A stretch of 33,618 nt of DNA from Octopus sinensis (GCF_006345805.1 NW_021831718.1:1-33618); one strand, 5' to 3'. Positions 904 through 33,618 are shown, numbered from the stretch's first letter. Notes: generated by a model from the sequence alone, not told the origin. Numbers and translations: made by a program.

Positions 904-1480
904 TCACCATCCATTAATTTTTTCCTCATGATTTATATTTTCATTATTTTTATCTTTAATGTTTCCGCCATTGTCCATCTCTTCTATTGTATCATTTTCT
1001 GCATATTCATATGCAAGAAATTCTTCAATATCCAACGGATCAAAAATATCTGTCCTTTCTATTGGTATACTATTATTATTTAGAATTAAGAAACAATTTG
1101 AAATGGTATGTTGCGATACATCTTTCCATGCCATTTTAACAAATATCACAACATTCTTTAATGTGAGCTTTCTACATGAACTATAAACAAATATTTCTTG
1201 ATGTTCTAACAAATCCGTTAAATATGCAAGTTTGTGCTTATTGAAATGCGTTTTGAAATTTTTTATAACTCCCAGGTCCATTGACTGGACCAAGCCTGTA
1301 GTATTTCGCGGTATAAACATGATTTCAATATTAGACAAATTTTCTGGTATGTAATGGGAAGGACAGTTATCCAAAATAAGCAAAATTTGTTTTCTCTAAT
1401 TTTAAATTCAAATCAAAGTTTAGAGCTATAAAATTTGTGGCCAATTTGAGAATTCCTCAATTCCCCATTTAGCCTAATTT
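904..1480 (-). mobile_element. pogo/Tigger DDE_1 transposase fragment (C-terminal half)
   Basis: ORF 904-1383 has LILDNCPSH...LVQSMDLGVIKNFK...AWKDVSQHTISNCF, with 30 residues between the 2nd and 3rd catalytic Asp. Upstream frames are broken. Confidence 0.85.
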
Positions 1481-1814: not shown

Positions 1815-3177
1815 CTAACGAATATCCGCAGACGGATGGAGATCAAAATACTCTGCAGTCGTCATAGATTGGCTGTCTGCTTTTTTATCCGTCCCACTGT
1901 CACTATCAATTCGAATTCGCTTCGAAGTTGAATATAACGGCTTCACTCTCTACAAAAATTCACAAAATCACTACAACCTTTGCCTGTTTTTTGCCAGTCT
2001 TTACATTTGAGGCCAACAAACCCCTCAGAGCCTCATAATTTGGTTTTTCGTCATATTCAAGAGCAGCAACCTGCTCAACAAATCCCAAAAGTCCAGGTGG
2101 TGGTTTAGAAGTAGAAAAACACGTTTTTATAAACTTTTTTGGGTTTTTTAAATGTCTAAATAATAATTATATTCCTGTGATACTCGTCTTTTAATTTGGC
2201 GACAGAACTCGCGTCTGATGTGACGGCATCCCACGGAAGAAAACCACACAACCAGCGAATAAGACAAAATACAAGTATTTCAAAGTCTCCTCTCCTCGAA
2301 GGATCAGCACCCATGTGTGAATCTCTGCTGGTGAACTCGATAGTTCCATTATGACACTTTTTTGGCTTTGGAGTATATTTTTTATGAACTCCATTGGCAG
2401 TATACCGATATGACAATCCAAAATCTGCCAAAACATACTAAATCAATTCACCCACACCAACAAACCCTATCTCTGAAGTTTTTTGCTAAAGAACTCAGCA
2501 AATTGGAAGCTTTGATGTCAGCATGGACATACTCATGTTCGTGTAAGTATTCCAAAGCGTTAACCTGCAGTAATAAAATGAAAAATTAACAATGTCAATA
2601 GAAATCTGATATGCCTCATTGACGGTGAGTTTATAATTCTTGCAGGACATGATCTTTGATTGAAGGTCATCTCCAAATCTGTCCATAACAAGAAACCGAT
2701 ATTTTCTTCCTCCATAATTATGAAGTCCAAATCCGACATAACGCGGGAGACCAATAAAGGATAAATTGTGATCAATACACCACTTACTCACTATTTTAAA
2801 TTAAATTCGACTTTATACAATTGTTTTCGTTTAATGCTCGAATATAAACTTGTTTTTCACAGAAGAGAGGACCGCTTTCGTTGGCTTCCAATTTAATGAC
2901 ATATTTCGCTTGAGAATACGAATTGTTAAGCAATCCGACATTCATATGAGCTAATATAATTATTGATTTATTTAAAAATAAATTATATGTTTGTGATATT
3001 TTATGGTTAACCTGTATGGATAAATCCAAACCCGCCTTTTGCAAAAAGAGGGCCAAGACACCAGCTCACATTAGAAGCGTCGGTAAGGATCTCTCCTATT
3101 TCCATTTCATCAACTGACTTATCAACTATAAAGGCATTATTTTTAATATAAATACCTTTTCTTTTAGAACGAGGCAT
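1815..3177 (-). CDS. VRK1: vaccinia-related kinase (VRK1/ballchen-like), about 7 introns, mostly 26-30 nt
   Basis: The spliced product has [86 protein letters not shown] and YDEKPNY, which are VRK-specific CK1-group motifs. The exact last exon is uncertain. Confidence 0.9.
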
Positions 3178-4379: not shown

Positions 4380-4815
4380 GCTTCATGGACGGGAAGCCGA
4401 CTCAAGGATTAGAGCGTACTATCGCAATGGATATCCGCTCGAAAAACCATCTTGATTCGCGGGCGTCGCCTGTGATAGCAGACATGCGGGACCCGATCTC
4501 CTGAACGAAGCTGATTGCCTTACTGCCCAAGGAACCGGAAGTCTCAACCGCGAATGGATAGAATTGGAACTTCTCCGTAAGTGAGGAGTACTTCCGCATC
4601 TTTTTGCATTCCGCGGTTGTGACAATAGATCCAGGGTCGGATGCGGACATCAGCAGGTTCTGAGGCGATAAAGAGTCCACACACGTGGCATCCCAGGTAA
4701 GAGACTTCCCCCTGTTGAGGGGAAACACAGTGATCCCGTCAGGCCTTTTTCCGTCCCCCCGATCGATCCCAGAAAGTTCAAGCAGTGAGGGAATTCCGGC
4801 GACAAAGAATGTGCG
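4380..4815 (-). mobile_element. CRE-like RLE non-LTR retrotransposon, 3' fragment (copy A)
   Basis: GIDRGDGKRPDGITVFPLNRGKSLTWDATCVD...ECKKMRKY...FYPFAVETSG...TGDARESRWFFERISIAIVR is a PD-(D/E)xK restriction-like endonuclease of CRE-type elements. The patch is GC-richer than its flanks. Confidence 0.8.
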
Positions 4816-7829: not shown

Positions 7830-8110
7830 ATTATAATTACTCAACACAGCTCTTCTCCAAGACCATCCCGATCGTAGGCACAGAGAATTCTTTCTAGCCT
7901 TCCGTCAAGTTTTACTCCGTAAGCCAGTTTTAATGCGGAACGTATCGTCTTTTCTAACTGTTCAATAAGGTAGTCACTCTTCTCCGAATCGAACCAGTCT
8001 AGTAACCATATGTGAGGGCTAGGTGTACAGATTTATGTTTCCGAACCCAGATGGAATCTGATGGAACACTCCTTTTCCTCAGATTTGCTACGCGGTCGGC
8101 TTACGGGATA
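7830..8110 (-). mobile_element. decayed R2/NeSL-like non-LTR RT thumb-region fragment
   Basis: The broken frame IRFHL...IEQLEKTIRSALKL...LCAYDRDGLG resembles the IRxAxR/K...YAPxxDGGLG segment of RLE-type RTs. It contains stops. Confidence 0.35.
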
Positions 8111-8149
8111 CGAAAAGTAACAATTAGTTTAAGGCAGCGTTCAGACTAT

Positions 8150-8452
8150 CTGTATTATCAGAGTGGCCGCGAACGTTTGTGTCTTAATAAATTGACAGGT
8201 TTTAATGAATTGTTTCCAAGTAAACATCGCACAACATACACTGCGCCTTATCCACATTGTCTGTTCCAAAAGATTTGGTGAATCCATATTGCATATATGA
8301 GTCATCCCATTTACGCGTTTTATTAACCATAACGAAAAACAAATGAACCATGCTATCAAAATCGATTAAATTATTAAAATCATCTTAATAATAACAAATT
8401 AAAAAATGTTCCGCGTACCCCTAGGGACATGTACCCCCGTTTAAGAAACCTG
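8150..8452 (-). mobile_element. hAT (Buster/Charlie/ZBED5-like) transposon 5' end with TIR and zinc-finger start
   Basis: The minus strand begins CAGGTTTCTTAAACGGGGGTACATGTCCCTAGGGGTAC, then encodes MVNKTRKWDDSYMQYGFT...DKAQCMLC...KPVNLLRH (frameshifted). Confidence 0.7.
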
Positions 8453-8662
8453 GTTTAAGGTATTGTAAATTTTTTTTAAGTCAAACAAAATCACCGTCTT
8501 AACCATTAACTAACACGTTCAGGTGACTAACACACATTCAAACTTTTGGAGAGATCCATAGCATTTTTCATTTAAAAAAGCAAAGAAATCTTAGTAAAAA
8601 ACCTTAATTATAAAAAATAAAATATTTAAATAATTTTAATCCTTGTTAAGACTCGTGTTGTA

Positions 8663-11516
8663 ATGGGAAAATCTTCTAAAGATAGACGAGACATATATTA
8701 GATTTGCCAAAGAACAAGCATGGAGAGCGAGAAGTGCCTTTAAGCTCATACAAGTAGATGATCATTCAATCTTCTTAACAGTAATCTTACTCATAACAAA
8801 TCAGATTGCAAGTACGTCGTGGATCTCTGTGCCGCACCAGGAAGCTGGACCCAAGTAATAACAAAACGACTGCGGTACAATAATTTAACTATCTCAGAGA
8901 CATACACAATGACTCCAATCAGTTCAAAGTAGTGTCAGTGGACGTTCAGGAGATACAGCCACTGCAAGATGCTATTACACTGCAATGTGACATTACAGAT
9001 GTTTATACAGTAGACTATCCATTTAACGAAAAAAAATTTAACGAAAATATTCATTTTACGAAAATCAAAATATTTTTTTACGTTGTTCCTTAGATAAATT
9101 CAAAAATAAAATTTTTTTTCTTTGTATTAGTGAATATTTAAATATATTTAACGAATATTTAAATAACGAAAATTAAAATTTTTGATAAAATTTTAAAATA
9201 ATTTTTCCTCGCTATTTCTTTGTAGTAAACCATGTGTGCAAGGGTGAACAATGAAGAAAAAAAGAAAAACTTATCAAATTCAACAAAAACTGGAAGTTAT
9301 TGATTTCAAGAAAAATAATCCTGATGTTACTCAAGAAAATTTGGCTCAGCGGTTTAATATGCCTATTGGAGTGATCAATTCAACGTTGAAGAAAATGCAA
9401 TTGTATGGATCAAGGCGTCACAAACAAAAAAAGAATATTACATTTAAAAGTTGTACTGATAAGATATATGACCATGGATTCAGAACAAACGTTTCTGTAA
9501 TCACACCATAACTAATGAAATGGTACGCGAAATGGCACTCAAAATTGCTCAACGATTTTATATTGAAAATTTCAAAGCATCTCACCCATGGATTTCACGC
9601 TTTAAGGAAGAGTATAAAATAAAAACACTCACGATTTCTGGAGAACAATTAGTGGATCCCGTTTTGCTTATAGATTCATATGAACGCTTTGCAGCCATGT
9701 TAAAAAATATGGATCGAAAAATTTTTACAACTGCGATGAAACTGCCCTTTTTTTCAAATGTACTCCAAAAAAACATTAGTTCTTGACTCCGAATCAAGGG
9801 CTTCAGGAAAATTTTTTAAAGAACGAATAACACTGTTATTATGCACAAATATGGAAGGAGATAAAGAGCATCCGTTGGTAATCGGAAAATTCAAAAATCC
9901 TCATGGTTTTAAAAATATTAATATGAATAATCTTGGGATTCAATATGCAAATAGCAATAAATCTTGGATGACCAGTTAATTTTTAAAAACTGGGTTGAAC
10001 GGTTAAATTCCAAAATGAGTGTGGAAAATAGAAAGATTTTGCTTCTTTTAGATAATGCGCCAGTTCACTATTTTGATGGCGAATTCAGTAATATCGAATT
10101 GTATTTTCTTCTTCCAAAGACAACATCTAAGATTCAACCAATTGATCAAGGGATTGTGCATTCATTTAAATTGTTGTATAAAAAAGGAATCACTAGAAAT
10201 TTGAGTATGGGAACAAATATAGGAACATTGTCATATACAGATGAACTTACCAAATTCAAATTAGTGAATGCTCTACCTTTAATTATTGAGGCTTGGAACG
10301 AAGTCACAGTGGACACTATCAAAAATTGCTTTAACAAGGCATATAATTTGTTTAGTGAATCATTTTTCAACTGAAAGAAAAAAAAATTAAATAATTGGGC
10401 GAAGATCGATGAAAAAATACTTGAAGAATCCACTGACGAAAAAGGTATTAAATTTAAATCACCTTACAATTAAAGATAATAAAAGTGAAATTATGATTGA
10501 GTTTCCTGTCTGTGCACCTGTCGTCTGCGAAGAAAACGCGTATCTTGATACAATACAATGTGAGGAAGAAAATGAGCATGAAGAAATAGATAGCACAAAT
10601 GACAATCCCATTGGTTATGCAGATGCACTTAAATATTTGGAAAATATTGAAAAATATTTTTTGCAAGAATCTGGTGAACATATTCACCTAATTACAAATT
10701 TGAGAAATATATTGGCAAAAATTAAAAAGAAGGAACCTAAAATTACCGATTACATGACACATTTTTAATTAAACAATTTTTTTCGTTAAATTCATTTAAC
10801 GAATGCTCAATTTTCATTTTCGTTAAATGAATAGTCTACTGTATTTATTTTAATACTGTTAGAGCAAAACAGTCGATTTGATTATTCAGAATTTGGATGG
10901 AAATTTGGCCGACCTCGTTGTATGTGATGGAGCCCCCGATGGTTGTCCGTTTATTATTTTATTTAGTCACGGGACTGCATGACATGGACGAGTACATGCA
11001 AGCTCAACTTGTGCTTTCAGTAAGTTTATTAATATTTTTACAAGGCACTTAAAATATCCGTTAAATTGTTGAAGAAAGGAGGGTCTTTTATGTCTAAAGT
11101 GAGAAATTCAAATTGTTCTTAGATTTTTCGAGCTAAAAATTCTGATCTACTATTTTCCCAATTGAGATTGTTTTTTGAGGACCTTTCTGTTGCTAAGCCT
11201 GCCAGCAGTCGAAATTCGAGTGCAGAAGCGTTTGTAGTTTGCAGAGGATTTTGTGGCGCGGAAAAGGCACCAGAAAATTCATTTTTATTGTTTAAACATC
11301 AAAATTCTTTCCGTCCAGAATTTCTTTTTTGTGGAGATCTGAATTCATTGGATTCAGATAAAACTTATATGTTAGAAGTAGTATTTATACTTTCATTAAT
11401 GTCAGTTTGGAGAGGAGGAGTATGTATACCGCGAACCTATTCAGCCTCCTATTAATCCACCATATAAGGAGGCTTGTCAACTTAAAAAATGTGATAAACC
11501 AAGTCGTTTTTTATGA
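8663..11516 (+). CDS. FTSJ1: tRNA (cytidine32/guanosine34-2'-O)-methyltransferase FTSJ1/TRM7; two frameshifts in exon 1 as assembled
   Basis: MGKSSKDRRDIY, WRARSAFKL, VDLCAAPGSW, VVCDGAPDVTGLHDMDEY, KIFR, KPASSRNSSAEAF and LDSDKTY are present, with the K-D-K-E tetrad intact. Introns: 8781-8804, 8875-8897, 9001-10862, 10942-10966, 11020-11044, 11099-11122, 11378-11405. Confidence 0.92.
9008..10841 (+). mobile_element. full-length pogo/Tigger DNA transposon
   Basis: 25-bp TIRs CAGTAGACTAT(C/T)CATTTAACGAAAA with 1 mismatch; TA duplication at 9006-9007 and 10842-10843; repeated TTTAACGAA subterminal motifs. Confidence 0.95.
9251..10768 (+). pseudogene. Tigger transposase (HTH_psq/CENP-B HTH + DDE_1), split into about 5 frames
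   Basis: KLEVIDF..., FKASHPWISRFK, NCDETALFF, KERITLLLCTNMEG, KSWMT, LLLLDNAPVH, IQPIDQGIV and AWNEVTVDTIKNCF. Confidence 0.9.
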
Positions 11517-12772: not shown

Positions 12773-13390
12773 ATGCCAGTGCAAAGAAAGGAATATCAAA
12801 AAGTTGTGAATTCCGTCTGTGAGTAGAAAGTTTTAGTCGGGGATAAACATTGGCTATTATTCTTTCAAAAAAACTAAAATGATAGAAATTCCCAAATCGA
12901 CTGTGAGATTTGCGAGAATAAAATTGTTCAAAGACGGCACAAAAATGCGAAAATTAAATATAGATTTTTTTAGCAAAACCGTCGTCAAATCAAAAAACAT
13001 ATTACAATTGATCTCGAGGAATGAACCATCAATTTACGCTGTGTATCTTGCTCAAATAATCGAATTTAAATTTAATGTTGACGTATCTCCCAAACATTTG
13101 GTCCAATACTGAATTCATTTGGGTTATATTTCCGAGTAGCAAAACATAAACTTCTTTTTAGATGGGAAAATATCAAATTCAGATGGTTAATTTCGAGATA
13201 TTTTTCATATAAAGGAGTGAATAATCTTGTAATTATGAATAAAAAATAAACCGTGGGAAATCTTTAAACATTTTATAAAATAATCTTGAGCAATCGGCGT
13301 TAAAAATGGAGTTAAACTCATTTATTTTCAACAAGGAATATTTCATATTAATTTGTTATTAAAATACAAAAAATCTTTTTGTGTCCAGGT
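12773..13390 (+). mobile_element. decayed Tc1/IS630-like transposase relic
   Basis: IPKSTVR (HTH) and ISRNEPSIY...FKFNVDVSPKHL..Y..HLGY resemble the winged-HTH segment. Multiple stops. Confidence 0.35.
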
Positions 13391-13400
13391 AATTAATATA

Positions 13401-14667
13401 CAGTGAATCCTCGAAAATTGGCCAAAATTTTTTGAATTTATTTTTTTAATTAGAAAATAAACTATTTTTTAATGACATGTCTTATAAAATTTACTCGTGG
13501 ACGTTATACTCGCTGACTTTTCATGAAAAAACTCAAATTATAAACTACAAGGTAGAAAATGATAGTGTTTTGTGTCAGCTTTTGGCTGACAGATTCTCAC
13601 ATCTATTCAGCAAGACGATCTCGAGAAAAATGATTAATAATCCACTGCTTAATAAGGATTATTTGATTTGAAAATCTATTAAATTTTTTAAAACTGCTCA
13701 CAAACCTTAATTTCCTATGCTTGAAGAAAAATTGGTAGAATGGATGGATACAATAGAGTCTAAAGATATTAATTGAAAATTAATTTCTAGGCGGTTTTTT
13801 GGAATGATTCCTTAATACCTTGTAAGGCTGCGCATTTTGCCGAAAAGTTAAAACTTGATAATTTTAAAATTTTACCGGATTTTTGGAAAAATTCAAAAAG
13901 AGGTATGATTTTAAAATGCCAAAATTATATCGAGAGATTTGGACTGATAAAGTAGTTGACATTAATTCGTTTCGTCAATTATTTAAAGAAATTGCTAAAT
14001 CTATAATCTGGATGAAACTACAAACTTATTCAGCGAAAAAAATATGCAAAAACCGATTCCAAGGATACAAATATTATATAGACCGTGTGTATATTATGCT
14101 TTGTTCAAATATGACCGGAAATCATAAATAAAAACCAGTTATGATTGGAAAACCGAAAATGCTTAGATGCATTAGAAATGTCAACTATGGATTTCTAGTC
14201 TCATATTATAGCTCACAGAAAGCTTGGATGACTGCATCTATATTTATTGATTGGATTATCAGTTTTGACCTGTAGCTTAAAATTAGAAAGAAAATTTTAT
14301 TTCTAATAGACCACTGTCCTGCACATTGTATCCCTAAAAATTTAATAATTGAACACTATGATAGTGATAATTGAACACTATGATACAAAAATCACATATC
14401 AACTTGATGGAAAAAACATAGAATTTAGATTAACCGGAATAGAAAGGGAACTTGACTATAGTGCAGAAAAAAATGAAAATGATGTTTTGCCCATTACTAC
14501 AATAAAAAAAAGCAAACCTAAAACGGGAAAGTAAAAAGAAATTAGGGATTAAATTTTATTTTAATTAAATTTAAACGTGTCTGTTTTAATTTCTAAAGTA
14601 TTGATTATTTCAAATTGGCCATAAAATTTTCATGTCCTAAAAATAGCCAAATTGCGAGGATTCACTG
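13401..14667 (+). mobile_element. pogo/Tigger element, internally decayed, TIR-bounded
   Basis: TIRs CAGTGAATCCTCGAAAATTGGCCA / CAGTGAATCCTCGCAATTTGGCTA; TA at 13399-13400 and 14668-14669; remnants FPMLEEKLVEW, MLCSNMTG, KAWMTASIF and IDHCPAH. Confidence 0.9.
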
Positions 14668-14884
14668 TATTTTACGTTAAAATACAAAAAACAAAAATAA
14701 ATTTAAATATTAAAAAAATAATGGTATTGAGAGAAAGAATGATTTTAAAACATTAAACTATCATTTTTAAGAAAAAATTTGATTTTTGGCAAATCCAATC
14801 CCTTTTGTGGGGCATTCTAAGTCCTCAAGTAGCAAATAAGACAAAACAAAATATTGACAACAAAAAAAAGAAAAATTTAATTTA

Positions 14885-15400
14885 TATTAGTCGCTGAGCG
14901 GATGGACAAGCAATTTCCACGTAATATCTCGACAGATTCTGCTTGAAAATCTACATCGTTTCACGACTGTTGTAACTCCTCTTCGATTTGATTAAACCAA
15001 TCTCTGAGAAGAATTTAAGAGCTTTTTGGCCAATCACCCCACTGTTTTCAAAGCCCGGGGAACGAAGCAACAAGTTTTGACCAAGGGAGCATACTTTGCG
15101 ATTTCTTTTGGTTTTAGCCATAGCACAGGCAAATCTATGGCTAAAACATAGTCTATGACCACTGATGACGAAAACGAGTCGACATATGTTACATCCCATA
15201 GGAGGGAAAGTCCCATTTTGAACTGGAATAAAGTAGACCTGTCAGGACGCTTTCCGATTCCACGGTCTAGCCCAACTGGTTCCAGTACTGAAGGAAATCC
15301 AGTGGCGCTAAGCGAACGTCAAAACACAATTCAGTGAAGAGTGCTTTAGAATCCTCCTGGCACTGAGACAAAACATGAATATTGTTCGTGAATGAATGTG
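14885..15400 (-). mobile_element. CRE-like RLE retrotransposon 3' fragment (copy C)
   Basis: GFPSVLEPVGLDRGIGKRPDRSTLF...LLWDVTYVDSF...AKYAPL...ENSGVIGQKALKFFSEIG, with frameshifts. Confidence 0.8.
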
Positions 15401-20365: not shown

Positions 20366-22337
20366 AAGTTAAGTTAAGCCATATTCAGCTGATTCCGACC
20401 ATTGGCGATTCTGTAAGACAGGTCCCTCCACGAAACTCTATCCCCACCAGCTCTGCTATTTCCGACAAATGATGTCCGGTAAGTTTCACTACTTCAGATG
20501 TCCAGTTTAGTTTCGGTCTACCCTGCTTCCTTTTTCCAGCGAACGAAGACAGCAGGATTCTTTTCCTATACCATACTCCCGAAGCACGTGCCCCAAATAT
20601 GATAATTGTTGCTTCCAAACTTTCGCACAAGCGACAGTGTAGGTTTAATCCTTTCGAGAACAACGACATTTGACACTTTGTCGTACCAATTTGTGTTCAA
20701 AAGTTTGCGCCAGCACCATAATTCCAGTGAGTCCACTCTTTTGCTGTGAGCTTTGGACAGTGTCCAAGATTCACAGCCATAGAGAAAAACGGGAAACACA
20801 ATCGCGTTGACTAGTCCTATCTTTGTCTTGAGAGAAACATCCTTGCTACTCCAGATCCGATTCAGTTTTATCATCGTACTCCTGCACATAGCCATCCGTC
20901 TATTAATTTCTGAGACACAGCCACCATCTCTGGTTATTAGACTTCCAAGAAAGATATAACTTTCAACATGTTCTATTTCTTCGTCGTCGACGATGACACT
21001 AATTTTTCCAGACAGTGAAGTTGTCATTATTTTGGTTTTTTTCACATTTAGGAATAGGCCAAAAGAGGCACTGTTGTCTTTGACTCTCGTAATTAATTGC
21101 CTCAAGCCATCCTCTGTTTCAGACAGCAAAGTAGTATCATCTGCATAACGGAGATTATTTATGTTGAGGCCACCAATTTTGACTCCGATATCATTTTCGC
21201 AATTTAACACCTCCATGACTTTCTCCGTGTAAATATTAAACAGTAGCGACGATAGAATACAGCCTTGTCGGACGCCGCGCCCAATACCGAAACAGTCTGT
21301 GTCTCCATAAGGAGTCCGCACAAAACCCTCTTGGTCAGTATAAAGAGATTTTATTAACGATATGAGATGATGAGGAATTCCAAATTCTTCCAGGACTGAC
21401 CAAAGTTTCACGTGAGATACGCAATCAAAAGCCTTGCGATAGTCAATGAAACACATGAAAAGAGGCTTCTGGGATCCACGGGATTTTTCCAAAATCCATC
21501 GAAGGCTGGAGATGTTATCTCTCGTACCACGACCACGTCTAAAACCAGCTTGATAATTTGAAAGAATCTTTTCTGAGATTGGAGATAGACGTTGTTTTAT
21601 TATCGACAGGAGTATTTTGCTAACATGAGATATGAGAGCAATTGTGCGGTAATTCGAGCAGACTTTGCTGTCGCCCATTTTAGGCAACAGAATAAATATT
21701 CTTCCAATCAGAAGGCCAAATACCAGTTTTCCAAATATTCTTGCAAAGAGTTGTGATTGCTGATAAAGGAATGGCCTTAAGCATCTCGCTTGAAATATCG
21801 TCCGGCCCAGGCGCCTTGTTGCAAGGCAATTCATTCACGGCCCATGTAACATCACTTTCTCGGATATCATCTTCGGGGTTCGGAAAAATAATGAGCGATC
21901 CATGATAAGGTGCTGAAGTTTTGTATTCAGGAGAATAAAGTTCTTCCACGAACTCCCTCCATCTGTTTCGGATGCTGTGACTGCTGAATAACTCTCTGCC
22001 ATCCCTGTCGTTGACTTTTCCTTTCCGAGCAGTAAAAGGAGTATGTGATTTTCTCACTTGTGTAAAAGCATTCCTGAAATGCCCTTTCTTAAAGTCATTC
22101 TCCAACTGAGTGCAACACTTTTGCCAGTACTCATTTTTGTTCTTCCTGACTGCATGACGGAATTTGGCATTTAAAGAGACGACATCCTTTTTCCTGCCAG
22201 TAGCCTTTGCTTCTCTACGACAGAGGGCAATTTTAATAGTATCTTCTGATAGCCAATCGCATTTAGAGTCAGATTTTTTGATGGACAGATGTTTTTCTGC
22301 CGCAGTGTTGATGATCGACTGTTTAAAACGGATGTTG
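20366..22337 (-). mobile_element. 5'-truncated RTE-clade LINE with 10-bp target-site duplication
   Basis: RT motifs KAPGPDDI, NYRTIALISHVSK, QAGFRRGRGTRD, FIDYRKAFD, GVRQGCILS, LRYADDT, YIFLGS and GKRKQGRP; (CTTAA)n-type 3' tail; GATTAGCATA at 20356-20365 and 22338-22347. A few frameshifts. Confidence 0.95.
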
Positions 22338-23634
22338 GATTAGCATATTTTTTAAAAAAGATCGTCTTTGTGGGGGATGTATGGGAATGCAATTTACTCA
22401 TCATGTTTATCGCGCAAAAACCACAGTTGTGCTAACATGAAACGGAATTGTCATAGATTACTACAAAAGTGACCTAGACTCTCATAAAATAAATAACCAA
22501 AGCATATATCTAGTTGGTCGTTCTTGAGAAGACGTTAAGGACCATGCACGTGAAAAAAACATGAATTTTTGATACGTTCCTATAAAGAGAAGCCTAAAGT
22601 CAAACCCCATATGTTAATATATCCGTTTAAACAGCATATTTCCAAAAAAACATTTTAAATTGCTGATCTCTGAAATCGAGATTCGCTTCAAAATCAAAAA
22701 ATGAAAGCTTCAAGATGGAAGAATCTTATAAAAACAAAATTGATTTGATTCACTATGCATTTAAACTTCCTAATATAAATTTATAAGTAAACCTTTGAAA
22801 CATTACCAACTTTGTAAATCCTAAGTATAAATTTGTAAATGGTATTAGTTTAGCAATTATTTTTGTAGCTGAACTTTTTAATGAAGTGAATTTGCGCGCA
22901 AAAACTATGTACTAATAGTAATTCATCAATGTCGAATAGAGAAATCCATCAATGCCAAATTATTAAAATTAAAGTTTCTCGCTTTAGATGATCACAGCTA
23001 AGTTATATGGAATCCAGGTGCTTTTATATCATAAATAATATTTTTTCAGAAATCTGTATTTACTCTCATGTTATTCAATATTTTAATTTTGACTCGTGTC
23101 ATACAATAAAAAAAGTCGAAATAGTCGTTTATAAAAATATTCCTTTATAGATAAATGGAAAGGAATCTTTTACATTTTTGTTGCAATGACAGTCAACTGG
23201 TGTTCAAGCCGTTTGGAAAAAATTATATTTTTATATGAGACCGATGATCTAAAGATTTTATTCTTAGTTATGTTTATGTTATGATTTATACATTATTGAG
23301 ATTTTATAAACTAGGTATATTGTATTTTGTTATTTTTTTTACAGATGGCTTAAGATATAAAATGAATCAAAATAATAAAAACTATTAAAAAACTATCATA
23401 TAAATTAATTCAGTTAAATAAAAAATTTCTGAAACATTTTCGATGTCTTTTTCAATAAGGGGAAAGCAAAGAAACTGCATAATATTGTAATTTTCTTGAA
23501 ATCTATGTTTAAACTCGTTTAGTATATTTTTTAGTATTATTGAAAATACATATAAATAAGGATTTTTATCGGAGGGTTTTAATCCTCAATGTTAGAAAAT
23601 GGGTAAAATAACAGTGAATATAATAATAATCAAT

Positions 23635-33099: not shown

Positions 33100-33618
33100 T
33101 TTTAAACCCGTACGTTTAATCCAGATTGGACTCATGAATATTTCTTTATTGAGGATAATAGAAACCCTATATGCTTAATATGCTTCTAAAAAGTTGCTGT
33201 GCAAAAACTTTATAACATCAAGCGACATTGTAAAAAATTTAACAAGTTTTCAGGGGAATCTCGCTTAAAGGAAATTAAGAACCTCGAACAAAATCAAACA
33301 ACATTTTTTAAATAATTTGAGATGTAAAAAAGATGATATCACATGTACAAATTACGAAATTTCAAAGATAATTGCGAAACGAATGAAACCATTTTCAAAT
33401 CTCCCGCATTCAAAATTAGTTAGAATTACAACAGATAGGGGTCAATCTATGGTTGGAAACAAAAAGGGAACTATTACATTACTCCAAAATGAAATGGAAA
33501 AATTTGGAATTGAGTACAATTTGGCCAAGATTCACTGTATTATTTATCAAAAGGCGTTAGTTGCCAAATCAGTCAAATTACGCGAGACAATGGATGCTGT
33601 TGTTAACGCAGTAAATTT
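33100..33618 (+). mobile_element. internally deleted hAT (SPIN/GTF2IRD2-like) transposase, runs off window end
   Basis: TFNPDWTHEYFFIE...PICLIC...YNIKRH, IIAKRMKPFS joined directly to LPHSKLVRITTDRGQSMVG, then IHCIIYQKALVAK...MDAVVNAVNF. Confidence 0.85.

What the first reader, a model, noticed from the sequence alone, without database searches (positions are those of the whole stretch)
9001..10862. 1.83-kb Tigger inserted into a 26-nt micro-intron of FTSJ1
Removing 9008-10841 plus one TA restores GTTTATATTTATTTTAATACTGTTAG, a 26-nt intron like its 23-28 nt neighbours. It joins ...CDITD to SKTVDLIIQ...DLVVCDGAPD in frame. The insertion sits 7 nt from the donor and makes the intron 1862 nt, about 70-fold longer. 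This is a natural test of whether a micro-intron spliceosome can still splice a long intron, and of whether TEs can hide in such introns or instead kill the host gene.
Basis: partly seen in the sequence, partly recalled or inferred. Interest (0 to 1): 0.75.

Follow-up and report, generated by a model that had tools for sequence, protein, structure and literature searches.

The report
Dead Tigger transposon in FTSJ1 micro-intron
A broken 1.8-kb "cut-and-paste" transposon sits inside one of the tiny (about 26-base) introns of a tRNA-methyltransferase gene in an animal with miniature introns; the insertion is real, but the gene copy also has a frameshift near its start, so it may be a disabled copy, not proof that such introns can grow 70-fold.

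Summary
Window 9008-10841 is a 1,834-bp pogo/Tigger-type DNA transposon. It has 25-nt terminal inverted repeats (24/25 matching), TA on both sides, and Tc5-HTH and DDE_1 domains. It lies 7 nt into an intron of FTSJ1/TRM7. Removing it and one TA leaves a 26-nt GT-AG intron and an ungapped, in-frame junction. The annelid Capitella has a phase-0 intron at exactly this position, so the intron is ancestral.

- The transposase is dead: 5 frameshifts and 1 stop against an intact 501-aa relative.
- The host is an animal with micro-introns, probably a dicyemid. Published data show a tail of longer introns there, so a strictly short-only spliceosome is unlikely.
- FTSJ1 has a frameshift at codon 13, giving a TAG stop at 8699. 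No intron or alternative start can rescue it. As assembled, the gene cannot make the enzyme.

This is an ordinary intronic transposon insertion. Sequence alone cannot say whether the 1,862-nt intron is spliced or this is a null allele or young pseudogene. I lean slightly to the latter. Interest is modest; RNA-seq would settle it.

The parts
9008..10841 (+). Non-autonomous (dead) pogo/Tigger-type DNA transposon, 1,834 bp, with the transposase in the same orientation as FTSJ1
   Evidence: TIRs found. Pfam HTH_Tnp_Tc5 and DDE_1. tblastn of the intact 501-aa relative P0242 covers the element in frames 1>3>2>1>3>1.
9008..9032 (+). Left terminal inverted repeat CAGTAGACTATCCATTTAACGAAAA
   Evidence: 0 mismatches to the degenerate pattern; 0 chance matches expected.
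10817..10841 (-). Right terminal inverted repeat, 24/25 identical to the left one
9006..9007 (.). TA target-site duplication, left copy
   Evidence: Read directly from the sequence.
10842..10843 (.). TA target-site duplication, right copy
   Evidence: Read directly from the sequence.
9024..9172 (+). Left subterminal T(T/A)ACGAAA motifs (starts at 9024, 9039, 9056, 9164), probable transposase binding sites
   Evidence: Six motifs lie inside the element against 4 in the other 31.8 kb. The same motif lies next to the TIRs of the intact relatives L001-L003. The binding role is inferred.
10781..10826 (-). Right subterminal T(T/A)ACGAAA motifs (10781, 10818; inverted orientation)
9251..10765 (+). 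Remnant transposase coding region: N-terminal HTH, Tc5/CENP-B-type HTH, DDE_1 with DD30D residues, C-terminal ...KITDY tail. It is broken by 5 frameshifts (near 9475, 9700-9725, 9750-9770, 9976, 10375-10600) and a TGA at 10372.
9001..10862 (+). FTSJ1 intron 3 as it now stands (1,862 nt): native donor GTTTATA, then the element, then the native 3' part TTTATTTTAATACTGTTAG
   Evidence: A phase-0 intron at the same residue in Capitella teleta FTSJ1.
8663..11516 (+). FTSJ1/TRM7 gene. Exons: 8663-8780 (with the frameshift), 8813-8874, 8898-9000, 10863-10941, 10967-11019, 11045-11098, 11123-11377, 11406-11516 (TGA stop).
8696..8702 (+). Frameshift in exon 1: ...GAC ATA TAT TAG in the ATG frame, with AGA TTT GCC (RFA...) continuing at +1. 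One Y of the invariant D-I/V-Y-Y-R motif is missing, which looks like a 2-nt deletion.
   Evidence: No GT between 8663 and about 8735, so no intron can explain it.
10841..10862 (+). Potential cryptic 22-nt micro-intron (GTATTTATTTTAATACTGTTAG) formed by the last base of the element, the TA and the native 3' intron part
   Evidence: A prediction only, with no transcript data.

Best explanation
A pogo/Tigger-type cut-and-paste transposon integrated at a TA dinucleotide 5-6 nt into an ancestral, phase-0, 26-nt spliceosomal intron of FTSJ1/TRM7. It duplicated the TA. The host is an animal with miniature introns, most likely a dicyemid.

The copy is now dead: its transposase frame is broken in at least six places. 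It keeps both TIRs and the subterminal motifs, so it could move only if a working transposase were supplied in trans.

The insertion left every native core splice signal outside the element: GT plus 5 nt at the 5' end, and 19 nt with the A-rich stretch and AG at the 3' end. It moved them 1.86 kb apart.

Shown: the insertion, its boundaries, its family, its decay, the ancestral intron, and the exon-1 frameshift in the assembled sequence.

Inferred, and where I commit: this copy of FTSJ1 is more likely a disabled allele or very young pseudogene (transposon insertion plus frameshift) than a working gene with a 1.86-kb intron. The locus is therefore an ordinary example of a transposon landing in a gene, not evidence about the limits of micro-intron splicing.
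For: Insertion anatomy.

Ancestral intron.

Frameshift: the ATG frame reaches TAG after 12 codons, while the homology runs on in the +1 frame. The motif RDIYYR is reduced to RDIY-R. The +1 frame has a stop at 8661 and no ATG before 8700 (read).

The neighbouring VRK1-like gene (387 codons) and torsin gene (345 codons) read through without any frameshift using only GT-AG introns. Four more multi-exon genes can be closed the same way. The assembly is therefore not generally riddled with indels.

The indel density in the element (5 in about 1.5 kb) and in FTSJ1 (1 in 0.84 kb) is compatible with both having decayed neutrally since the insertion. This is my own Poisson estimate: P(<=1 | 2.8) is about 0.23.

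If the intron is retained, translation stops 30 codons after CDITD, before the catalytic D, K and E.
Against: All seven downstream exons (about 250 codons) have no stop or frameshift. All six other introns keep GT-AG and a micro-intron length. The SAM motif VDLCAAPGSW and the K-D-K-E residues are present. Identity to mollusc FTSJ1 is 54%. This is what selection on a working gene would give.

If the element's lesions arose in place, the insertion is old and the gene has survived it.

A single indel could be an assembly error. The published Dicyema assembly merged PacBio RSII and Illumina contigs (PMC6736024). Only about 2.2 kb of neighbouring coding sequence was checked by hand.

Longer introns exist in these genomes, so splicing of 1.86 kb is not excluded.
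Confidence: 0.5

Rival explanations
1. The gene works. The 1,862-nt intron is removed by the normal spliceosome from the native GT (9001) to the native AG (10862), and the exon-1 frameshift is an assembly error or a rare allele. Pairing of the two TIRs in the pre-mRNA may help by looping out the element, so that only about 22 unpaired nucleotides separate donor and acceptor.
For: Intact downstream exons, splice sites and catalytic residues. Native splice signals lie outside the element.

The minimum-free-energy fold of 8981-10882 pairs 9005-9032 with 10817-10844 (27 bp). The duplex alone is -35.4 kcal/mol.

The element is heavily decayed while the gene is not. A 61-nt intron in the same window and published tails of longer introns (PMC6543705, PMC6736024, PMC13644364) show the machinery is not strictly length-limited.
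Against: As assembled, no full-length protein can be made. The lesion looks like a 2-nt deletion in a non-homopolymer context, and it removes an invariant Tyr. That is not a typical long-read error.

The TIR stem would also sequester intron positions +5 to +7, and in the MFE +1 and +2 as well, which could hinder U1/U6 binding.

Four AATAAA signals lie on the sense strand inside the element. There are no transcript data.
Confidence: 0.38
2. The element is removed at the DNA level in somatic cells, by precise TA-to-TA excision or developmentally regulated DNA elimination into circles. The expressed gene copy would then carry the 26-nt intron, in the manner of ciliate internal eliminated sequences.
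For: TA boundaries and TACAGT ends resemble excision substrates. Dicyemids are reported to form extrachromosomal circular DNA during development (Noto et al. 2003, as cited in PMC6543705). The TIRs and subterminal motifs are intact.
Against: Nothing in the window points to this. pogo/Tc1-type excision normally leaves a footprint rather than a precise junction (general knowledge of the family). It would not cure the frameshift. The assignment of the organism to dicyemids is itself inferred.
Confidence: 0.04
3. Programmed +1 ribosomal frameshifting at UAU UAG A rescues exon 1, so the gene is intact and the only open issue is the long intron.
For: A 0-frame stop codon followed by the correct +1 frame is the layout of antizyme-type shift sites (general knowledge). 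The sequence is shown.
Against: The product would lack one residue of the invariant YY. No stimulatory element was sought or seen. I know of no precedent for FTSJ1.
Confidence: 0.03

Closest known systems
pogo/Tigger superfamily of IS630-Tc1-mariner DNA transposons (RepeatMasker class TcMar-Tigger/pogo)
   Same: TA target duplication. TIRs starting CAGT. Transposase with CENP-B/Tc5-type HTH (PF03221) and DDE_1 (PF03184), with a D,D,D triad and 30 residues between the 2nd and 3rd D. A C-terminal ...KITDY/F tail. Size about 1.8 kb.
   Different: This copy is dead. It belongs to an undescribed compact lineage whose nearest intact relatives (501 aa; per-piece identity 37-62%, 54% over the main DDE_1 piece) are unnamed metagenome or Logan contigs, plus one microsporidian protein. 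Its placement among the Tigger, pogoR and other clades was not tested.
Transposon insertions in introns of animal and plant genes (general phenomenon, including TIR/MITE elements)
   Same: An element sits between intact native splice sites, and its inverted ends are able to form a long stem in the pre-mRNA.
   Different: The recipient intron was only 26 nt, so the insertion changes intron length about 72-fold. It lies 7 nt from the donor and 21 nt from the acceptor.
Micro-introns of dicyemids and myxobolid myxozoans (Ogino et al. 2010 as cited in PMC6543705; PMC6736024; PMC13644364)
   Same: GT-AG introns of 22-32 nt at conserved animal intron positions, with a reduced 5' motif and A residues upstream of the AG.
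   Different: This one now measures 1,862 nt. Those papers, in the sections I read and searched, say nothing about transposons inside introns.
Ciliate TA-bounded internal eliminated sequences derived from Tc1/mariner elements
   Same: TA boundaries and TACAGT-like ends interrupting a gene in an AT-rich genome with about 25-nt introns. This was my first hypothesis.
   Different: The host genes are clearly animal. The standard genetic code applies: no in-frame TAA or TAG in the checked genes. There is no evidence of elimination. Rejected as a membership.

Membership tests
pogo/Tigger DNA transposon | TA target-site duplication | tested here: met
   TA at 9006-7 and 10842-3; removing one copy restores a 26-nt intron.
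pogo/Tigger DNA transposon | Terminal inverted repeats beginning CAG(T) | tested here: met
   25 nt, 24/25 matching; 0 chance matches in 100 shuffles.
pogo/Tigger DNA transposon | CENP-B/Tc5-type helix-turn-helix DNA-binding domain | tested here: met
   PF03221 HTH_Tnp_Tc5, E 2.5e-6, 27.8 bits against a cutoff of 22.2. The N-terminal HTH aligns to P0242 residues 9-55.
pogo/Tigger DNA transposon | DDE_1 catalytic domain with a D,D,D triad | tested here: met
   PF03184 in two pieces, E 1.3e-9 and 5e-21. NCDET, LLLDNAP and QPIDQG are present, with 30 residues between D2 and D3.
pogo/Tigger DNA transposon | Uninterrupted transposase ORF (defines an autonomous copy, not the family) | tested here: not met
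   5 frame changes and a TGA at 10372 relative to the intact 501-aa P0242.
pogo/Tigger DNA transposon | Phylogenetic placement inside the Tigger clade rather than another pogo clade | not tested
   Only best-hit evidence: one relative is named 'Tigger transposable element-derived protein 6' by NCBI.
FTSJ1/TRM7 tRNA 2'-O-methyltransferase | Full-length similarity to FtsJ-domain (PF01728) Trm7/FTSJ1 proteins | tested here: met
   Best hit E 3e-83, 54% identity, 98% coverage; all top hits carry PF01728.
FTSJ1/TRM7 tRNA 2'-O-methyltransferase | SAM-binding motif and K-D-K-E catalytic residues | tested here: met
   SAFKL, VDLCAAPGSW, VVCDGAPD, SKIFR and SSAEAF align with the homologues. The assignment of the tetrad rests on general knowledge of the RrmJ/FtsJ fold.
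FTSJ1/TRM7 tRNA 2'-O-methyltransferase | Translatable open reading frame from the start codon | tested here: not met
   TAG at 8699-8701 in the ATG frame; the rest of the protein is in the +1 frame.
Spliceosomal micro-intron | GT-AG boundaries, neighbour-like length once the insert is removed, and an in-frame exon junction | tested here: met
   26 nt against 23-32 nt for the six other FTSJ1 introns; ungapped alignment across the junction.
Spliceosomal micro-intron | Intron position shared with other animals | tested here: met
   Capitella teleta FTSJ1 has ...ACC AAG|GTGCTAGG...TTTTCAG|GTT AGC..., phase 0, at the same aligned residue.
Spliceosomal micro-intron | Removal from the transcript | not testable with these tools
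   No transcript data for this organism. Protein searches found no same-species sequence.

The most novel reading that the evidence does not exclude
The gene is functional, and a spliceosome tuned to about 26-nt introns removes a 1.86-kb transposon-filled intron. The element's own inverted repeats zip up in the pre-mRNA and restore a micro-intron-like distance (about 22 unpaired nt) between donor and acceptor. TIR elements could then be the one kind of transposon able to hide in micro-introns.
Probability: 0.12. Interest if true: 0.65.

Novelty: new member of a known kind. Interest (0 to 1): 0.3.

Why it matters
If transcripts show clean 9000/10863 splicing, this locus would be a concrete case of a micro-intron in one of the two animal lineages with sub-30-nt introns tolerating a 70-fold expansion. 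That would argue that intron miniaturisation there reflects deletion bias or selection for compactness, not a mechanical length limit.

If the copy is instead a null allele or pseudogene, it shows the opposite: insertions into micro-introns are purged or kill genes, which would help explain why the introns stay small in a genome that is half repeats.

Either answer is obtainable with existing RNA-seq and read data. On sequence alone it is an ordinary intronic transposon insertion.

Tried and rejected
1. Ciliate germline IES or Paramecium-type reading. I considered it because of the 25-nt introns, AT-richness, TGA stop and TACAGT ends. I rejected it because FTSJ1 and VRK1 have animal best hits and the checked genes need no TAA/TAG read-through.

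2. Euplotes-style +1 frameshifting: rejected for the same reason, and because a Tyr is missing.

3. A second frameshift near 8767: resolved as a 32-nt intron (8781-8812), which gives a better match to the homologues.

4. Micro-introns inside the transposase as an explanation for its frame changes. The spliced-ORF search proposed some, but the intact relative aligns straight through those points, so they are frameshifts.

5. Search for same-species FTSJ1 fragments or an empty allele. Three attempts found nothing: the protein search with the 97-aa exon ORF gave only one 38% hit, and the metagenome scans for the TIR and for the empty-site sequence were both empty. The organism is not represented in the collections.

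6. Rfam and tRNA scans of the window: no hits.

7. Other copies of the element in the window: none. The two other pogo-like pieces are only about 36% identical to P0242 and share no nucleotide similarity with this element.

8. Organism identity could not be proven. Dicyemid is favoured over myxobolid because the window is rich in transposons, because no Thelohanellus hit appeared in either search, and because spiralian hits lead for FTSJ1.

Full report
**1. The observation**

An inverted-repeat search finds arms 9005-9032 and 10817-10844 that are 96% complementary. The 25-nt core CAGTAGACTATYCATTTAACGAAAA occurs exactly twice in the window, once on each strand. Nothing was expected in 100 dinucleotide-preserving shuffles. 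TA lies immediately outside both ends.

The ORF pieces inside the element carry HTH_Tnp_Tc5 (E 2.5e-6) and DDE_1 (E 1.3e-9 and 5e-21). These are the domain pair of pogo/Tigger transposases.

Joining the flanks in a script, with one TA removed, gives GTTTATATTTATTTTAATACTGTTAG, 26 nt.

**2. The host gene**

Splicing the flanking exons gives a protein whose best matches are all animal tRNA (cytidine32/guanosine34)-2'-O-methyltransferases (FTSJ1/TRM7). Identity reaches 54% over 98% of the query.

A MAFFT alignment with seven of these proteins is ungapped across the junction: window ...LQCDITD|SKTVDLIIQN against ...IQGDITK|TSTADEIIGH.

The other introns of the gene are 32, 23, 25, 25, 24 and 28 nt.

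I fetched the Capitella teleta FTSJ1 locus. It has a phase-0 intron at exactly the same aligned residue: ACC AAG|GTGCTAGG...TTTTCAG|GTT AGC, that is GDITK|VST. It also shares the phase-1 intron after GAPD. The interrupted sequence is therefore a genuine, ancestral intron, not something created by the element.

**3. The organism**

My first thought was a ciliate germline genome, given the 25-nt introns, AT-richness and TA-bounded TACAGT ends. The evidence rejects this:
- FTSJ1 hits are led by molluscs and other animals.
- A VRK1-like neighbour hits vertebrate VRK1 at about 45%.
- The standard genetic code suffices for the genes I checked.

Only two animal groups are known to have introns under 30 nt: dicyemids and myxobolid myxozoans (PMC13644364).

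The window is crowded with mobile elements:
- three pogo-like pieces;
- a LINE reverse transcriptase;
- two stretches with a GKRPD...WD motif, of unidentified family but probably mobile-element remnants.

That fits Dicyema japonicum, which has 49% repeats and many LINE ORF2 copies (PMC6736024). It fits less well with myxozoans, described as having relatively few transposons (PMC13644364). No Thelohanellus protein appeared in either search. I therefore favour a dicyemid, as an inference of roughly 70%. No same-species sequence exists in the searchable collections.

**4. The element**

A whole-library HMMER search with the largest DDE piece found about 500-aa relatives at 51-53% identity.
- They are unnamed metagenome or Logan proteins, plus one 'Tigger transposable element-derived protein 6' from the microsporidian Dictyocoela muelleri.
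- The contigs that carry the best one (P0242, 501 aa, intact and intronless) are complete 1.7-kb elements. They have TA|CAGTCAAAG... ends and the same subterminal TTAACGAAAA/TTTACGAAA motifs as the window element.
- In the window those motifs occur six times inside the element and four times in the remaining 31.8 kb.

tblastn of P0242 against the element shows the homology jumping through frames 1>3>2>1>3>1, with a TGA at 10372. That makes five frameshifts and one stop. The catalytic D (NCDET), D (LLLDNAP) and D (QPIDQG, 30 residues after the second D) are still recognisable.

This is a dead copy that retains its ends. The two other pogo-like fragments in the window are different families.

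**5.

The ATG at 8663 opens MGKSSKDRRDIY and then meets TAG at 8699-8701. The conserved continuation RFAKEQAWRARSAFKLIQ... lies in the +1 frame.
- No GT lies between 8663 and about 8735, so no intron can bridge the shift.
- The +1 frame has a stop at 8661 and no ATG before 8700.
- In the alignment, one Tyr of the invariant D-(I/V)-Y-Y-R motif is missing. This looks like a 2-nt deletion: TATTATAGA became TATTAGA.

A second apparent shift near 8767 disappears if 8781-8812 is a 32-nt intron, which also fits the homologues better.

As assembled, the gene cannot produce the enzyme. Everything downstream is intact: about 250 codons with no stop, all GT-AG pairs, the SAM motif and the K-D-K-E residues.

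**6. Is the frameshift an assembly error?**

The VRK1-like gene (387 codons; introns 61, 28, 26, 28, 28, 28) and the torsin gene (345 codons; introns 27, 30, 27) read through cleanly under manual, homology-guided inspection.

A spliced-ORF dynamic programme closes four more Pfam-supported genes using only 22-36-nt introns: a Sad1/UNC gene, a MYND-finger gene, a NatB subunit gene and a solute symporter gene. That method could, however, hide a frameshift behind an invented intron.

The assembly is clearly not riddled with indels, but a single error cannot be excluded. The published Dicyema assembly merged PacBio RSII and Illumina contigs from pooled, 1.24%-heterozygous material (PMC6736024). A null haplotype is therefore also possible.

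**7. Consequences for splicing (inference)**

All native core signals lie outside the element. From the donor there is no AG between 14 and 92 nt downstream, so no micro-intron-sized partner exists. Read-through would stop translation 30 codons after CDITD.

Upstream of the native acceptor, the element's last base plus the TA creates GT at 10841. This gives a 22-nt GTATTT...TTAG unit. Another GT at 10834 gives a 29-nt unit. Either could be used as a cryptic micro-intron if the element is exonised.

The alternative is that the intron is removed whole. The minimum-free-energy fold of the whole intron pairs the two TIRs (27 bp, -35.4 kcal/mol for the duplex). That leaves 4 + 18 unpaired nucleotides between donor and acceptor. 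This geometry could mimic the original intron, although the stem also covers intron positions +5 to +7.

**8. Is a long intron remarkable here?**

Published numbers argue against a hard length limit:
- median 27 nt, but about one third of introns at or above 30 nt in Dicyema sp. (PMC6543705);
- mean 38 nt in D. japonicum (PMC6736024);
- introns over 100 nt analysed in myxobolids (PMC13644364);
- a 61-nt intron in this window.

In the window, the other mobile elements are intergenic, and about 55 modelled introns are micro-sized. The FTSJ1 case is therefore unusual but not inexplicable.

**9. Verdict**

The claim that it is a clean natural test of micro-intron splicing is premature, for three reasons: the gene copy is broken at codon 13, the element is a dead copy of unknown insertion age, and longer introns already exist in such genomes.

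I rate it a new member of a known kind with modest interest. Its value depends entirely on transcript and read-level data that the tools here cannot supply.

Noticed in passing
window 8696-8702: Frameshift in FTSJ1 exon 1: TAG stop after codon 12, homology continues at +1, and one Tyr of the invariant YY is missing. It decides whether the gene is alive.
   Followed up: yes
window 13400-14668: Second TIR-bounded, TA-flanked pogo-like element of about 1.27 kb: TA|CAGTGAATCCTCGAAAATTGGC ... GCCAAATTGCGAGGATTCACTG|TA, arms 90% complementary. It holds fragmented transposase pieces only about 36% identical to P0242. Its left flank reads CCAG|GTAATTAATA, but no coding exon was evident upstream. A similar TIR-like end (GCCAAGATTCACTGTA) lies at 33524-33540.
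   Followed up: partly
window 904-1392 (-): Third pogo-type DDE_1 fragment (Pfam E 1.1e-18), a C-terminal half only, downstream of the VRK1-like gene. It belongs to a different family from the FTSJ1 element.
   Followed up: partly
window 20385-22404 (-): Non-LTR retrotransposon with a 422-aa open RVT_1 reading frame (E 1.5e-37). GC is about 41% against about 30% in the surroundings. It sits between the MYND-finger gene and the next gene and may be a young LINE copy.
   Followed up: partly
window 4402-4728 (-) and 14951-15300 (-): Two related GC-richer stretches encoding a GKRPD(G/R)...(T/L)WD(A/V)T..VDSL motif with no Pfam hit. They are probably remnants of the same kind of mobile element; the family was not identified.
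   Followed up: no
window 2951-3011 (-): A 61-nt GT-AG intron in the VRK1-like gene, twice the usual size. It shows that the splicing machinery of this organism is not restricted to introns of about 26 nt.
   Followed up: partly
L001-L003 (metagenome 3300081876; SRR32618891; SRR32619173): Intact 1.7-kb relatives of the element with a 501-aa intronless transposase. They lie in three different flanking contexts, each bounded by TA, so this compact Tigger-like lineage appears to be currently active in some unidentified organism. The nearest named relative is in a microsporidian.
   Followed up: partly
window 8000-8480: A GC-richer block (about 36%) in the 1.07-kb spacer just upstream of the FTSJ1 start. 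It includes ...CCGCGTACCCCTAGGGACATGTACCCCCGTTTAAGAAACC... and has no ORF with a Pfam hit. It may be another repeat fragment lying in the FTSJ1 promoter region.
   Followed up: no
window 12879-13112 (+): A 77-aa ORF (MIEIPKSTVRFARIKLFKDGTKMRKLN...) next to the second pogo-like element. By eye it looks like a transposase helix-turn-helix, but it has no Pfam hit at E<0.01.
   Followed up: no
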